From Sminthopsis crassicaudata (Eukaryota), in the NCBI RefSeq assembly GCF_048593235.1, contig NC_133617.1, forward strand, positions 260,050,937 through 260,114,936: 64,000 nucleotides of DNA. The letters run 5' to 3'. A model generated the notes under the pieces. The model was given only the letters and a program-made list of their open reading frames with translations, made no database searches and had not been told where the DNA came from. Positions within the stretch are counted from its first letter, which is position 1. Every line of letters starts with the position of its first letter. This document shows, one piece after another, positions 15,218 to 25,906 of this stretch. Made by a program: the position numbers and the translations under genes.

Positions 15218-15548
15218 ATGAGCAGCCCGGACGCGGGGTATGCCAGTGACGACCAGAGCCAAGCCAGGTGCGCACTGCCCGTGATGATGGCCGGGATGGG
15301 CCCCTGCCCTTGGGCAAAGTCTCTGAGCTCCCTAGGGGAGATGAAGGTCAAGAACGAGTCCGGTGCAGGTGCAGGGAACGGGGGTAGCGGCACGACTGCT
15401 GCAGCTGCTGGGTCTGCGGGCCGTGGCAAAGGGGAGTCCCGCATCCGGCGGCCCATGAACGCATTCATGGTGTGGGCCAAGGACGAGCGCAAGCGGCTGG
15501 CACAACAGAACCCGGACCTGCACAACGCCGAGCTGAGCAAGATGCTGG
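15218..15548 (+). CDS. SOX17: SOX17-like tandem paralogue (copy 2), coding exon 1
   Basis: gccATG; near-identical to copy 1 exon 1 (net one codon shorter in the Gly/Ala tract); identical HMG N-half protein; donor G|GTGAGT at 15548/15549, phase 1. Confidence 0.93.
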
Positions 15549-18500
15549 GTGAGTGGGGCTCTGAACATTTACAGCGGGAATCAGAAGTGCAGGGTTATGG
15601 GGAAGAAGTCCCCAGTCTATGACAAGGATCAAAGAAAGTACCGATTATTCTGAGAGGAGGGATTTTAATTTTAATTCAGTGGCTTATCCACAAGTGTCCC
15701 CATCATTTTTTTCTTCTTTTTCCTTTTTAATTGACTATCTAATAGCACCGCGCTGACCGCACTGACTATATGAGGGTAGTGGTGGTGGTGGTGGTGGTGG
15801 AGGGCGGAAGGAAAATTAAGGAAAATTCATCCTGAGGGGACCACAACCTTCTTTAAGAAGTACTCTCCAGGGAAAACCTGAATATGCATCTATGTCAATT
15901 ATAGATTTTTATAACCTTAGTTTAATTACTGCAAAGTGGTTCCTGAGAGTAAATGCAGATTTAATAGCAGCTTGGCTCTGTAGACCTGATTGTTGATTTC
16001 AGAACCAGGAAGTTCGGGGTTAAAATGCCACTGGCTCTCAAATCACTTAAGCCTTTAAATGTAAAAGTCTACGATTCTTCTAGAGGATACATTGTAGAAA
16101 AAGTTCTAGAAGACGTTGGTAGAGGGAGTTTTCTCTGGCTGATGTAACTTTTTAAGAATGTAATCACAGGTACAGTCTCTTATCTCTGGGTTAGAAATGA
16201 GTTGTAGAGAATCTCGGTGATTCTCTTAAGTGATTGTTCCGGCGGGTCGGGCAATTTGATAAAAATTGCTTTAAAAATAAATCCATCTATAACAAAAGCA
16301 GTATTGGGAAGAATTTAAATTCAATGTTCAAGTTTTCTTTGGTGCGAAGTTGAGAGGTGAGAGTATGCCACATTGGCGATTAAAAACAATTGGTCAGCGT
16401 TGACGATAAAGTTATTCAAAAATATTTCATCTTGTTTACACATTTAAATTGTTACTGGCTGTTATGTAGATACCACATCATCTATCTGTGCTAAGACAGT
16501 TTTCTGCGGGCACTATATGGAAGCAGCTGTGTTTAAAATGCTAACCTTTATATTATGGTTAACCTTCCACAATTAAAAGCCGCATCAGTATTATTGTGCT
16601 GAGAGCGAATTCTCCTGGGGAACGGGAGACTTGGGTTCAAGTTAAGACCATGTCTCCTACTGGGTTAATTAACCTTGGGTAGATTACTTTACCTCGTAAT
16701 TGAGCCTCATTACTCTAAGGTAATGAATTATGGAGAAGGTGCTCATCTACTTTGTTAAAGAAAAGCATCCTCTCCTCGGAGTAACCTAATTCGTTTCAAT
16801 CACAGGTTCAGTCCCTAGCACTTTTTCCAGGATAAGTATGTACCAGTTTCTAGCTGCTTCTTCTCCTCCTTCTCTTCCTCCTTCTCCAGGGAGGTAAGGA
16901 GATGTTACAAAATAGTTTTCTCAGTGATTCTGAAATGAGGAAGACAGACTTATGTTGTGAAAGTAGTATTTTGTGATGGAAAATGGCCAGAATCCAGGAA
17001 TATTTAGGTTCTAGATCAACTATTTCCACTAACTTAAGCTGTTTCACCAAAGGAAAGCCGATTGTCAAATAAGGATTTAGATAAAATTATCCCCAAGAGC
17101 TCTCCCAGGTCTGAAATACTATGAATGCTATGGCCCCGCATTAATTTTGTTAAAAACATCCTGAAATCTTTTTGCCACGTTATACTACAATTGCCTGAAG
17201 AGATGATTTTTATTTTAAATACTATGAAAGATAAATTTCTTGTGCTGATTAGAAAGCTGGTACAGTGCTATATGGTGTCCAAGTTAAATTGAAGCAGTTC
17301 CCTTCTGGCTCCATTTGATTTAGAAGACCACAAATTAACATGATGCATTGTATTTTTATTTCAAATATTTTCTTACATTTTAATCTAGCCCTCAGAGTTG
17401 CCCTTGGGCTTTGAGTTTGACACTTGTTTAGCAGCTACTGGATGGCTAGATAGAAAAATCAGGATTTTTAAGCCTTTCCTCAGATAATCAACTAACTGTA
17501 TGAACACTGACATTTCAGTCAAGCAGTAAGCATATATTAAGCATTTACTGTATGCTTAAACTCTGGGGAAACAAAGACAGACAAATTTTTTTTGTTGTTG
17601 TTGTTCCAAAGGAGATAAAAAACATGAAAAATAACCAGGTACTTATGACATATGCTCTAGACAGGAGAAAACGTGATCTCAGCGCTAGGTGCTAGGCAAA
17701 CTAGAAAAGGCCTCCCTTAACTGGCATTTGAACTAAGTGCTGAAGGAAGCCAGAGAAACTGAAGCATTGATAAAGAAGCAAAGGGGAGCTTATTCTAGGC
17801 ATAGGGGTTGATAGTGCAAAAGCATTGGATATTAGGAAGATGACTCCTCAAGACAAGAATATGTATTGCATAAACAGCAATGTATCTACCATTTAATGTT
17901 GTGCTCTGTTTTACATAAATTCATATGGCTTTACTTGTATTTCTGTGTTTGTATTTGTTAATCTTTTGCTACAAAGCATTCTACTCCAATGATGAGGCAT
18001 TAATTTGTAGTATTTTCCTATTGGGTAAAACAAAATTATAAAACCTATTTTACAAAATAGAAAATTTCCTTTTAAAAAAGTTAACCTTCTGCAGAAGTTT
18101 TTTATTACTATTTTGAAGATTAAGAAAAAGAGCTAAAGACCAAAATGGGGAAAGGCTCAAAAAATTATGCTATCCTGTACTCGAGTACCTGGGAGATATC
18201 TTTGAATAGAAAAAAATACATATGAGAGTTGTCTTCAATTCTTTCAAGAGCTTGTATGATATATTAAATAGCTTTAGACTTCTTTGACCTGAGCTGAGAG
18301 GACTGAAGTCTAGCAGCAGAGACGGATTTTTGTTTAAACAGGAAAACTTACACCAACAACTGTAGTTGACTCAAAAGTAATGACTCAAGGGAGGCTTGAC
18401 TCAAAGGGGAATGGGCTGCCCACGTTTGTGAAAAAGTCTTGAAGAGAGAGACCAACCAGATTGATTCTTTGTCAGGGACTGAATAGGTCTATTCAGCTCT

Positions 18501-24840: not shown

Positions 24841-25016
24841 AGTCCCAAATCCTCATTCTTTAGAGGCGGAACTGCATCAGAATTTGACCAAGTTCTAGTT
24901 TGAATGCAGTGTTACTGATGTTAGAACAAGTGCTCTTTCTACTACTGCATATTAGCTATCTTCAATTTTGAGATTTGTGACTTCATAAGATTAATTTTGT
25001 TCATTAATGTTGGCAG

Positions 25017-25906
25017 GGAAGTCCTGGAAGGCGTTACCTCTGGCCGAGAAGAGGCCCTTTGTGGAGGAGGCCGAGCGGCTGCGGGTGCAGCACATGCAGG
25101 ACTACCCCAATTACAAATACCGGCCTAGGAGGAGGAAGCAGGTGAAGAGGCTGAAGCGGGTGGAGAGTGGCTTCCTTCACAACCTTCCTGAGCACCTGGG
25201 CTCAGGGCTGGATTCAGAGGGCAGAGTGTGTGTGGACAGCCTGGGAGTGCCGTTCCATGAGCAGACCTACCACCATGGCCAGGGAGTGCTACCTCCTCAG
25301 ATGGGACACTACCGTGAATGCCAGAGTTTAGGTCCGGCCTCTCAGTTTGACAGCTACAATTTGCCAACCCCGGAGGCTTCTCCTATGGATGGGATGGAAT
25401 CAGATGCAGCTTTCTTCACCTCCTCACTCCAAGGAGACTGCCAGCCAGGACCCTATAGCTATCCTGTAACCTCTGAGTACTATGTACATCCTGACTCTCC
25501 TCTAGGTCCTGTGCACCAGAAACACATGCAGGAACCCCTGGCACACTCATTGCAGAGCCTGATGGGTCCCTCCAACCCTCTGCATATGTATCGTGGTCCC
25601 CCAGGCTCCCCCCAAGCTGGGAGCAGTGTCCATGGTTTTCAGATGCTGCATCAGTCAGGATCTAGTCAGCCCTCTCCTCCTCCAGAGGCCCTGGCCTGCA
25701 GGGAAGGTCTGAGTGCCAGCCAACCTGCTGAGGTCCAACAGTCTGGAATCCACACAGAATTTGAACAGTATCTTCATCATTTATGCAAAGCAGAGTTGGG
25801 GCTTGTCTCTCCAGGTCCTGATGGTGACCATAACCCTTCAACTATTTCCTCTATCATGTCAGATGCTAGTTCTATAGTCTATTACCATAATTATGAAAAC
25901 ATATGA
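25017..25906 (+). CDS. SOX17: SOX17-like tandem paralogue (copy 2), coding exon 2 (spliced protein 406 aa)
   Basis: Acceptor ggcAG at 25015-25016 in the phase needed to join exon 15218-15548; uninterrupted frame [14 protein letters not shown]...TEFEQYL...[16 protein letters not shown]; TGA 25904-25906. Confidence 0.92.

What the first reader, a model, noticed from the sequence alone, without database searches (positions are those of the whole stretch)
15218..25906. Second, apparently intact SOX17 gene in tandem about 11 kb downstream of the canonical one
Seen: a complete two-exon reading frame (406 aa) with gccATG, GT-AG splice sites in the same phase-1 HMG position, no stops or frameshifts, its own CpG-island promoter and a candidate poly(A) signal. 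Established: human and mouse have a single SOX17 (endoderm, endothelium, human germ-cell specification); teleosts have sox32 and Xenopus has sox17a/b as extra sox17-type genes. Inference: this marsupial carries a two-gene SOX17 cluster, possibly with divided roles in hypoblast/endoderm, yolk-sac placenta or germ line. I do not know of a description of it but cannot search the literature.
Basis: partly seen in the sequence, partly recalled or inferred. Interest (0 to 1): 0.92.

Follow-up and report, generated by a model that had tools for sequence, protein, structure and literature searches.

The report
Marsupial-wide second SOX17 gene
The second SOX17 gene is real, intact, transcribed and shared by all eleven marsupials examined; most of it is kept nearly identical to SOX17 by gene conversion while its last ~60 residues form a distinct conserved tail, but automated databases already list it as "SOX-17-like".

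Summary
Observation confirmed. The window is fat-tailed dunnart (Sminthopsis crassicaudata). It holds canonical SOX17 (c1: 1884-2217 + 2905-3806, 411 aa). 11.4 kb downstream lies a second two-exon gene (c2: 15218-15548 + 25017-25906, 406 aa, GT-AG, phase 1, 9,468-nt intron).

All eleven marsupials with complete models have the same pair. Tandem synteny was checked in opossum and wallaby, and the long c2 intron (7.3-12 kb) in seven species.

- **Selection.** c2 orthologues have dN/dS of about 0.15.
- **Mosaic evolution.** Codons 1-330 evolve in concert with c1: 95-100% identity within most species (88-98% in dasyurids), and the copies cluster by lineage. The last ~70 codons cluster by paralogue, are c2-derived, and are conserved (dN/dS 0.26).
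- **Distribution.** The c2-type tail was found only in marsupials.
- **Expression.** RNA assemblies hold c2-specific coding sequence but almost none of the intron. No splice-junction read could be obtained.
- **Literature.** Eight searches found no description.

Verdict: a real, selected, lineage-specific SOX17 paralogue. It is already annotated but apparently uncharacterised. Any division of roles with SOX17 is untested.

The parts
1884..3806 (+). Canonical SOX17 (c1): CDS exon 1 1884-2217, intron 687 nt, exon 2 2905-3806; 411 aa
   Evidence: 100% identical to XP_074134503.1 (P0111). The tail is of the ancestral type, shared with eutherians, turtle and Xenopus.
9183..14321 (.). Intergenic blocks between c1 and c2 that are still alignable with opossum (9183-9388, 9697-9917, 10322-10634, 11913-12741, 13709-14321); candidate regulatory elements
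   Evidence: blastn against the opossum locus L001, 72-80% identity. Function not tested.
14907..15217 (+). c2 promoter-proximal region / 5'UTR, homologous to the c1 upstream region (1571-1652 and 1730-1883)
   Evidence: The same -325..ATG homology appears in six other marsupials. GC 0.55-0.59, CpG o/e ~0.5.
15218..15548 (+). c2 coding exon 1 (110 codons + 1 nt): N-terminus and first half of the HMG box (HMG starts near 15440)
   Evidence: 90% nt identity to c1 exon 1. c2-specific 31-mers are held by RNA runs X1, X6 and X2 above the 0.085 baseline shared with c1.
15549..25016 (+). c2 intron, 9,468 nt, GT..AG, phase 1; no similarity to the 687-nt c1 intron
   Evidence: The long intron (7.3-12 kb) is conserved in 7 species. 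Its last 2 kb has about 0 depth in RNA runs X2 and X9.
18744..18974 (.). Intronic block conserved with opossum
   Evidence: blastn 75.6% over 234 nt against L001 14307-14537. Role unknown.
24987..25016 (+). Paralogue-specific, conserved splice-acceptor context (..TTTGTTCATTA.TGTTGGCAG|)
   Evidence: Nearly the same 30 nt in all 7 species' c2, and unlike the pyrimidine-rich c1 acceptor.
25017..25726 (+). c2 exon 2, part homogenised with c1: second half of the HMG box, Sox17_18_mid domain (about 25310-25460), proline/serine-rich region
   Evidence: Pfam HMG_box 77-144 and Sox17_18_mid 209-259. 91% identical to c1 here, 96-100% in most other species. Clusters by species. The c2-specific contig 25150-25277/82 has depth 127-300 in X1 and X2.
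25727..25906 (+). c2-specific C-terminal tail (residues 348-406) and stop. TEFEQYL core at 25754-25774, but the preceding ELL..VDR is replaced by EVQ..GIH; 4-residue deletion; the end is YYHNYENI instead of YYCNYPDG
   Evidence: All 24 fixed paralogue-diagnostic nucleotides lie in alignment codons 356-415. Clusters by paralogue 100/100. dN/dS 0.26, Fisher p = 2e-6.
25907..26480 (+). Conserved proximal 3'UTR with AATAAA at 26457-26462; contains a 153-nt tandem duplication (26108-26260 / 26261-26417)
   Evidence: Conserved with opossum to about 26445. AATAAA. Repeat. Covered by RNA contigs.
26481..27800 (.). Downstream transcribed stretch, continuous with the 3'UTR in the RNA contigs; either a long 3'UTR isoform or a separate RNA
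   Evidence: Contigs at depth 45-240 in X1, X2 and X9. An X9 contig of 3,871 nt runs about 2.4 kb past 27800. Strand unknown.

Best explanation
c2 is a functional protein-coding tandem paralogue of SOX17, found in every marsupial examined; here I call it SOX17-like, after RefSeq.

Shown:
- It is intact in 11 marsupial species. Tandem order and spacing were checked in opossum and wallaby, collinearity also in Tasmanian devil, and the two-exon structure with a long, paralogue-specific intron and acceptor in seven species.
- It is under purifying selection.
- It is a mosaic. The proximal promoter, exon 1 and the first ~710 nt of exon 2 (codons 1-~330: N-terminus, HMG box, Sox17/18 central domain) are repeatedly overwritten by gene conversion with SOX17, so that part stays almost the same protein.
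- The last ~60-70 codons escape conversion. They carry about 24 derived substitutions plus a 4-residue deletion, acquired before the marsupial radiation and conserved since.
- c2-specific coding sequence is present in transcriptome assemblies.

Inferred:
- The protein binds the same DNA sites as SOX17. Its HMG box is identical or 1-2 residues different, and the SOX17-type E in EAERLR is kept.
- It differs in what its C-terminal activation / beta-catenin-interaction region recruits. The EF(E/D)QYL core is kept, but the acidic D and the R just before it are lost.
- It probably also differs in where it is expressed, because all distal non-coding DNA differs.
- Selection against converting the tail is what holds the conversion boundary in the same place in all lineages.
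For: - **Identity.** c2 is 100% identical to RefSeq XP_074134508.1.
- **Pairs.** Paired c1/c2 models exist in 11 species of 5 orders, each with the c2-type tail.
- **Synteny.** Same strand, 10.4-11.4 kb apart in opossum, wallaby and dunnart. The locus is collinear with devil, wallaby and opossum.
- **Gene structure.** Intact GT-AG phase-1 structure in 7 species, with a 7.3-12 kb c2 intron against 0.57-0.74 kb in c1. The c2 acceptor context is conserved and paralogue-specific.
- **Selection.** dN/dS among c2 orthologues is 0.09-0.21, against 0.06-0.12 for c1. For the tail alone it is 0.26, with pN below pS at Fisher p = 2e-6 on three independent pairs.
- **Concerted evolution.** Within-species c1/c2 identity in codons 1-330 is 95-100% in most species (88-98% in the two dasyurids), against about 80-92% for orthologues. 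The tree of codons 1-330 pairs c1 with c2 by lineage, each at 100/100, and paralogue clades are rejected at p-AU 1e-54. The tail tree gives two paralogue clades at 100/100.
- **Homology limits.** Homology stops within 2-10 nt of both splice sites and 115-228 nt before the stop in every species.
- **Polarity of change.** Of 63 tail columns, 24 are c2-derived and 1 is c1-derived.
- **Domains.** Pfam HMG_box and Sox17_18_mid both score well above cutoff.
- **RNA.** The c2-specific contig 25150-25277/82 has 0-1 mismatch where c1 differs at 11 of 133 positions, at depth 300 (X1), 127 (X2) and 16 (X3). Intron 23000-24600 has depth 0 in X2 and X9. c2 exon-1 words occur in X1, X6 and X2 above the baseline shared with c1.
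Against: - No read or contig across the 15548/25017 junction was obtained. The intron exceeds the 6-kb limit of read laying, and 25017-25150 was empty in three of the four runs (X1, X2, X9), plausibly because of the human-likeness filter.
- In the fourth run, X3, the one contig across the acceptor (24908-25075) is unspliced.
- The runs are only guessed to be RNA. They are contigs without strand information, and their tissues are hidden.
- Run X9 holds only 25657 onward, so part of the signal may belong to a different RNA.
- Gene conversion alone could keep codons 1-330 open without selection on c2. The case for selection on c2 itself therefore rests on the tail, the splice sites and the ATG.
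- No protein-level or functional data exist. The claimed change in partner binding is inference from motif changes in a disordered region.
Confidence: 0.85

Rival explanations
1. c2 arose before the marsupial-eutherian split, possibly earlier, and was lost in eutherians. On this reading the apparent 'marsupial-specific' placement in trees is an artefact of gene conversion with c1.
For: Only the unconverted tail can date the duplication. Its synonymous divergence between c1 and c2 is about 1.0, which is 2.7 times (bootstrap 1.7-4.7) the crown-marsupial divergence of the same codons. With a crown age of roughly 80 My (from established estimates, not computed here), this centres near or before the therian split. 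The full-length tree is dominated by converted columns and so cannot exclude an older origin. No monotreme SOX17 protein of any type appeared in the searches, so monotremes are untested.
Against: The c2-type tail was found in no non-marsupial protein among 5.8 billion. Bird, turtle and frog 'SOX17-like' proteins have canonical or unrelated tails and group with their own lineages. The dS estimate rests on about 44 synonymous sites near saturation, and a shift towards A+T in the c2 tail could inflate it.
Confidence: 0.2
2. c2 is not an independent gene. Its exon 2 (or both exons) serve as alternative downstream exons of one long SOX17 transcription unit driven from the c1 promoter. This would give SOX17 an alternative C-terminus, since both introns are phase 1 at the same codon.
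For: Splicing c1 exon 1 to c2 exon 2 would be in frame. The two genes share strand and lie only 11 kb apart. An Ensembl-derived opossum model (F6RWE3, P0001) fuses parts of both genes. No junction data were obtained.
Against: c2 keeps its own ATG, Kozak context, exon 1, donor site and about 325 bp of promoter-proximal homology in all 7 species. c2-specific exon-1 words are present in the same RNA runs that hold c2 exon 2. The F6RWE3 join (...DAAF|LSKMLG...) is not at a splice site and looks like a prediction artefact.
Confidence: 0.07
3. c2 is a non-functional or dispensable duplicate whose open frame is kept only as a by-product of gene conversion from SOX17.
For: About 80% of the CDS is demonstrably overwritten from, or exchanged with, c1. 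That would repair disabling mutations without any selection on c2.
Against: The unconverted tail (about 70 codons) has stayed open in 11 species with dN/dS 0.26 (p = 2e-6), and its derived residues are fixed at 0.9 or more across orders. The paralogue-specific acceptor and stop contexts are conserved. c2-specific coding sequence is transcribed. In dasyurids, where conversion stopped before the dunnart-devil split, c2 still evolves at dN/dS 0.21.
Confidence: 0.04
4. Assembly artefact: a collapsed or duplicated haplotype, or a mis-join.
For: None specific. Two N gaps exist elsewhere in the window (37210-37413 and 46254-46409).
Against: Both gene models come from independent assemblies of 11 species, with the tandem arrangement confirmed in opossum and wallaby and collinearity also in devil. 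The copies differ by 9-10% in exons and have unrelated introns and UTRs. RNA contigs match c2 and not c1.
Confidence: 0.01

Closest known systems
Mammalian SOX17 (SoxF group), the neighbouring gene c1
   Same: Same locus and strand. Same two-coding-exon structure with a phase-1 intron in the HMG box. HMG box and Sox17_18_mid domain. 85% aa identity overall, and near identity over residues 1-330.
   Different: Intron of 7-12 kb instead of about 0.7 kb. Different acceptor, 3'UTR and flanks. A derived C-terminal tail (24 derived positions and a 4-aa deletion), whereas the c1 tail is almost unchanged from Xenopus to human.
Xenopus sox17a / sox17b and teleost sox32 (casanova), extra Sox17-type genes linked to sox17 (from established knowledge)
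   Same: Lineage-specific, linked duplicates of sox17 that were retained. In those animals the duplicates share or divide endoderm functions. The concept is the same: more than one Sox17-type gene at the locus.
   Different: Independent origin. Frog pairs and marsupial pairs each group within their own lineage. The tail of the second Ascaphus copy is unlike the c2 tail. Concerted evolution with a protected tail was shown here for the marsupial pair only.
Tandem paralogues under partial gene conversion (classical cases such as globin or opsin gene pairs; general knowledge)
   Same: Exon-limited homogenisation gives species-wise clustering of the converted parts and paralogue-wise clustering of the protected parts.
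   Different: Here the protected part is the activation tail of a developmental transcription factor, and the boundary has been stable since before the marsupial radiation.

Membership tests
SOX17 / SoxF transcription factors | SOX-type HMG box | tested here: met
   Pfam HMG_box, 88.7 bits (cutoff 25.4), residues 77-144. Two substitutions relative to c1 (S to P, H to Y). The SOX17-type EAERLR is kept.
SOX17 / SoxF transcription factors | Sox17/18 central domain (PF12067) | tested here: met
   76.5 bits (cutoff 25), residues 209-259.
SOX17 / SoxF transcription factors | C-terminal SoxF motif DxxEF(D/E)QYL (activation / beta-catenin binding; the motif definition comes from the literature as I recall it) | tested here: inconclusive
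   The core TEF(E/D)QYL is invariant in all c2. The leading D is replaced by I, V or S, and the following R by H, in 10 of 11 c2. The wombat c2 has the c1 form through a longer conversion tract. Binding was not tested.
SOX17 / SoxF transcription factors | Phase-1 intron within the HMG box at MLG|KSW | tested here: met
   Same position and phase in c1 and c2 of 7 species.
SOX17 / SoxF transcription factors | Phylogenetic placement inside the SOX17 clade | tested here: met
   c2 forms a clade (100/100) inside marsupial SOX17, which is sister to eutherian SOX17. Caveat: most columns are gene-converted.
Orthologue of amphibian sox17b or of sauropsid 'SOX17-like' genes | Groups with those genes, or shares their tail | tested here: not met
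   Frog and bird pairs group within their own lineages. Bird pairs differ by 3-4 residues and have canonical tails. The c2-type tail was found only in marsupials.
Processed retrocopy / pseudogene | Intronless, or with disabling mutations | tested here: not met
   Intron retained, frame intact in 11 species, dN/dS about 0.15.
Expressed gene | Spliced mRNA joining 15548 to 25017 | tested here: inconclusive
   c2-specific exon sequence is present and the intron nearly absent in RNA assemblies. No junction-spanning record could be obtained.

The most novel reading that the evidence does not exclude
Marsupials keep a natural 'tail-swap' of SOX17. Gene conversion locks the DNA-binding and central parts of the paralogue to SOX17, while selection protects a rebuilt C-terminal activation / beta-catenin region and a separate regulatory landscape. 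The two proteins would then occupy the same sites but give different outputs, or act in different lineages such as hypoblast / yolk-sac endoderm versus endothelium or germ line. Published marsupial 'SOX17' signals (antibodies, probes, multi-mapped reads, the fused Ensembl model) would be mixtures of two genes. A variant of this reading is that the pair predates therians and was lost in eutherians.
Probability: 0.3. Interest if true: 0.75.

Novelty: new member of a known kind. Interest (0 to 1): 0.5.

Why it matters
SOX17 is a standard marker and regulator of hypoblast / primitive endoderm, definitive endoderm, arterial endothelium and, in several non-rodent mammals, primordial germ cells.

If every marsupial has two SOX17-type genes that are nearly identical over 80% of the protein, then several kinds of marsupial data cannot tell them apart:
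- antibody staining;
- in-situ probes;
- short-read quantification.

An Ensembl-derived opossum model fuses the two genes, and RefSeq swaps the names 'SOX-17' and 'SOX-17-like' in some species.

The pair is also a clean natural experiment. It shows which part of SOX17 may diverge (the activation tail) and which may not. It is also an example of a gene-conversion boundary held stable for at least the age of crown marsupials.

Tried and rejected
- **Splice junction.** A direct test with read laying was not possible. The intron (9.5 kb) exceeds the 6-kb limit set for this genome. The single call (23000-27800) showed no loose end at 25017, because 25017-25150 was empty in three of four runs, plausibly through the human-likeness filter. 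X3 showed only an unspliced low-depth contig there.
- **Tissue of expression.** Run, sample and study names are coded and library fields are empty.
- **Ancient origin shared with bird, turtle or frog 'SOX17-like' genes.** Rejected by the tree and by the tails.
- **Monotremes.** No monotreme SOX17 of any kind appeared in three protein searches, so nothing can be said.
- **Dating the duplication.** The full-length tree was rejected as uninformative once concerted evolution was seen. Dating from tail dS is imprecise.
- **Literature.** Eight searches (SOX17 combined with marsupial, opossum, wallaby, dunnart, duplication, paralog, tandem, SOX17-like, SoxF, primordial germ cell) gave no paper describing the pair. 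Three papers opened were irrelevant. Subscription-only papers were not searchable.
- **Structure prediction.** Not run, because the informative region is a short, probably disordered tail.
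Full report
**1. What is in the sequence**

Reading 15000-16200 and 24700-26300 and joining 15218-15548 to 25017-25906 gives a 1221-nt frame. It codes for 406 residues plus a stop, with no internal stop. The donor is G|GTGAGT and the acceptor is TTGGCAG|G.

The canonical gene lies upstream at 1884-2217 + 2905-3806. It codes for 411 aa and has a 687-nt intron at the same phase-1 codon inside the HMG box. 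The two proteins are 85% identical overall.

Within the window, DNA similarity between the copies is confined to three stretches:
- 1730-2223 against 15065-15554, at 90%;
- 2903-3691 against 25015-25803, at 91%;
- a weak block at 1571-1652 against 14907-14993.

Introns, 3'UTRs and flanks are unrelated.

The side claims are weaker. The 'CpG island' is only moderate: CpG o/e is 0.52-0.70 over 14800-15600, much like c1. The first canonical poly(A) signal is AATAAA at 26457.

**2. Whose genome, and is the gene already on record**

A protein search with the C-terminal two thirds of c2 returned 'transcription factor SOX-17-like' entries from many marsupials. Cluster look-up and pairwise comparison show two exact matches:
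- c1 is 100% identical to XP_074134503.1 of Sminthopsis crassicaudata;
- c2 is 100% identical to XP_074134508.1 of the same species.

Eleven marsupials each have one protein with the canonical tail (..[20 protein letters not shown]) and one with the c2 tail (..HNPST.SS.MSDASS.VYYHNY(Q/E)NI). They are Monodelphis, Gracilinanus, Dromiciops, Macrotis, Sarcophilus, Antechinus, Sminthopsis, Vombatus, Phascolarctos, Trichosurus and Notamacropus.

The naming is inconsistent. In Sarcophilus and Gracilinanus the c2-type carries the name 'SOX-17' and the canonical one '-like'. The UniProt opossum entry F6RWE3 (545 aa) is a fusion of parts of both genes.

**3. Conserved locus structure**

Genomic loci were fetched for six further species.
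- In opossum and tammar wallaby the two genes lie on the same strand, 10.4 and 10.5 kb apart. In the dunnart they are 11.4 kb apart.
- Exact CDS reconstruction worked for all twelve genes with GT-AG introns in phase 1.
- The c1 introns are 569-740 nt and the c2 introns 7,311-12,070 nt.
- The dunnart locus is collinear with Tasmanian devil (about 87%), wallaby (72-80%) and, in patches, opossum.
- The 30 nt before the c2 acceptor and the stop context are conserved among c2 genes and differ from c1.

**4. Selection**

Pairwise Nei-Gojobori estimates among orthologues are:

| Gene | dN/dS range | Typical value |
|---|---|---|
| c2 | 0.09-0.21 | about 0.15 |
| c1 | 0.06-0.12 | about 0.10 |

c2 evolves somewhat faster than c1 but is clearly constrained.

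**5. The main new point: a mosaic of concerted and divergent evolution**

Synonymous divergence between c1 and c2 within a species (0.12-0.29) is lower than between orthologues of different orders (0.3-0.55). Yet both copies exist in all orders.

A 30-codon sliding comparison explains this.

| Region | c1/c2 within a species | Orthologues (Australidelphia vs opossum) |
|---|---|---|
| Codons 1-330 | 95-100% in most species (long runs of 100% in bilby, wallaby, koala, monito del monte, opossum); 88-98% in the two dasyurids | about 80-92% |
| Last ~85 codons | 62-80% | 79-94% |

All 24 nucleotide positions that are fixed differently in c1 and c2 lie in alignment codons 356-415.

The trees confirm this. 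For codons 1-330, c1 and c2 pair by species or lineage with 100/100 support, and forcing the c2 genes into one clade costs 671 log-likelihood units (p-AU 1e-54). For codons 346-415, the seven c1 and the seven c2 form two clades with 100/100 support.

In Dasyuridae the last exchange predates the dunnart-devil split. That is why the dunnart copies are more different from each other than those of other marsupials.

In every species homology runs from about -325 of the ATG to +6..+10 of the donor. It resumes 2-4 nt before exon 2 and ends 115-228 nt before the stop.

Two c2-specific HMG substitutions recur patchily in distant lineages: S to P in KAL-S-LAEK and H to Y in QD-H-PNYKY. They never appear in c1. 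This is as expected if they are old c2 states erased here and there by conversion from c1.

In wombat the converted tract reaches further and restores the c1-type ELLADVDR in c2.

**6. The tail**

With gibbon, manatee, turtle and Xenopus as outgroups, the 63 tail columns divide as follows:
- 24 are c2-derived;
- 1 is c1-derived;
- 32 are shared;
- 6 are ambiguous.

So c1 keeps the ancestral tail. c2 was rebuilt once, before the marsupial radiation, and most derived states now stand at a frequency of 0.9 or more.

Since then the c2 tail has been constrained. Its dN/dS is 0.26, with pN 0.066 against pS 0.220 on three independent pairs (Fisher p = 2e-6).

The EF(E/D)QYL core is invariant, but the residues just before it change from ELL(A/G)(D/E)VDR to E(V/I)QE(A/T)G(I/V)H. 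The stretch after the ELGL motif is shortened by four residues, and the end changes from YYCNYPD(G/V) to YYHNY(Q/E)NI.

From the literature as I recall it, this region of SoxF proteins carries transactivation and beta-catenin binding. The consequence for c2 is inference only.

**7. Origin**

The full-length tree puts all c2 in one clade (100/100) inside marsupial SOX17, which is sister to eutherian SOX17. Bird, turtle and frog 'SOX17-like' proteins sit within their own lineages. Bird pairs differ by only 3-4 residues and have canonical tails.

A search restricted to the c2 tail found only marsupial c2 proteins among 5.8 billion sequences.

Most columns of the tree are gene-converted, so the tree cannot date the duplication. 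Tail synonymous divergence between the paralogues is about 1.0, which is 2.7 times (bootstrap 1.7-4.7) the crown-marsupial value. The duplication is therefore much older than crown marsupials. It lies on the long marsupial stem or possibly before the therian split.

No monotreme SOX17 of any kind appeared in the searches, so that test is open.

**8. Transcription**

Fourteen runs guessed to be RNA from five studies hold 0.36-0.68 of the sampled words of 25017-26400. Other runs of the species hold none.

I laid four of these runs on 23000-27800 at 97% likeness or more.
- Intron 23000-24600 has depth 0 in X2 and X9, and 0-6 in X1.
- Exon 2 and the 3' region have depth 45-527.
- The contig 25150-25277/82 is the c2-specific arm between two stretches shared with c1. 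It matches c2 with 0-1 difference where c1 differs at 11 of 133 positions. Its depth is 300 (X1), 127 (X2) and 16 (X3).

For exon 1, 8.5% of the 31-mers of 14900-16000 are shared with c1. Runs X1 and X6 (0.23) and X2 (0.17) exceed that baseline. X9-X13 (0.09-0.10) do not. So c2 exon 1 and exon 2 co-occur in X1, X2 and X6.

The limits are as follows.
- No junction-spanning record was seen.
- 25017-25150 was empty in three runs, probably because of the human-likeness filter.
- X3 also holds intron sequence and one unspliced contig across the acceptor.
- Contigs carry no strand information.
- X9 holds only 25657 onward, and there the contigs continue to about 30.2 kb.

The conserved 3'UTR ends near 26445, next to the AATAAA at 26457. 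What the downstream RNA is remains unexplained.

**9. Literature**

Eight full-text searches and three papers opened gave no description of a second marsupial SOX17. Marsupial papers that use SOX17 as a marker, such as PMC9604385, treat it as one gene. Subscription-only literature could not be searched.

**10. Verdict**

The feature is real and is a functional-looking gene. It is a pan-marsupial SOX17 paralogue, already present in automated annotation, that seems never to have been characterised.

What this analysis adds is its mosaic mode of evolution and the exact extent of what is paralogue-specific:
- the last ~60 residues (window 25727-25906);
- the acceptor context;
- the long intron;
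- the 3'UTR.

I rate it as a new member of a known kind, namely lineage-specific retained Sox17-type duplicates as in frogs and teleosts, and of moderate interest.

Noticed in passing
P0001 (UniProt F6RWE3_MONDO, 545 aa): The Ensembl-derived opossum 'SOX17' model is a chimera. It joins c1 exon 1 and part of c1 exon 2 (to ...DAAF) to the end of c2 exon 1 (LSKMLG...) and c2 exon 2. Analyses built on that model would merge the two genes.
   Followed up: partly
P0117 / P0106 (Sarcophilus), P0004 / P0112 (Gracilinanus): RefSeq names are swapped relative to other species. The c2-type protein is called 'SOX-17' and the canonical type 'SOX-17-like'. In several species both are called '-like'.
   Followed up: yes
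window 26481-27800 and beyond (to about 30200): RNA contigs continue at depth 45-240 far past the conserved 3'UTR and the AATAAA at 26457. Run X9 holds only 25657 onward, without c2-specific coding arms or exon 1. This could be a long 3'UTR isoform, a 3'-biased library or a separate RNA. Strand unknown.
   Followed up: partly
window 26108-26417: A 153-nt tandem duplication inside the c2 3'UTR (26108-26260 and 26261-26417, 92-95% identical). The devil locus aligns to both copies.
   Followed up: partly
window 18744-18974 and 9183-14321: Non-coding blocks in the c2 intron and in the c1-c2 spacer that are still alignable with opossum at 72-80%. Candidate enhancers or alternative exons.
   Followed up: no
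c2 HMG box, window 25050-25052 (S to P) and 25103-25105 (H to Y): Two c2-specific HMG substitutions recur patchily. P occurs in dasyurids and diprotodonts. Y occurs in dasyurids and Monodelphis. Neither is ever seen in c1. This suggests old c2 states partly erased by one-directional conversion.
   Followed up: partly
P0107 (Vombatus c2): In wombat the conversion tract extends further 3' and restores the c1-type ELLADVDR before the EFDQYF core, while the rest of the tail stays c2-type.
   Followed up: partly
window 33563-34168 (+): 201-aa ORF that looks like the cysteine-rich C-terminal end of a LINE-1 ORF2. Identified by eye only.
   Followed up: no
window 47487-48014 (+): 175-aa ORF that looks like a retroviral integrase core, probably an endogenous retrovirus fragment. 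Observed only.
   Followed up: no
window 10787-11099, 34156-34468 (inverted, 94%), 38251-38551 (82%): Copies of an interspersed repeat of about 300 bp. The region 24610-24770 also behaves as a repeat: it has depth in all four RNA runs, with loose ends.
   Followed up: no
window 15777-15800: A (GGT)n microsatellite about 230 nt into the c2 intron.
   Followed up: no
window 37210-37413 and 46254-46409: Two runs of N (204 and 156 nt).
   Followed up: no
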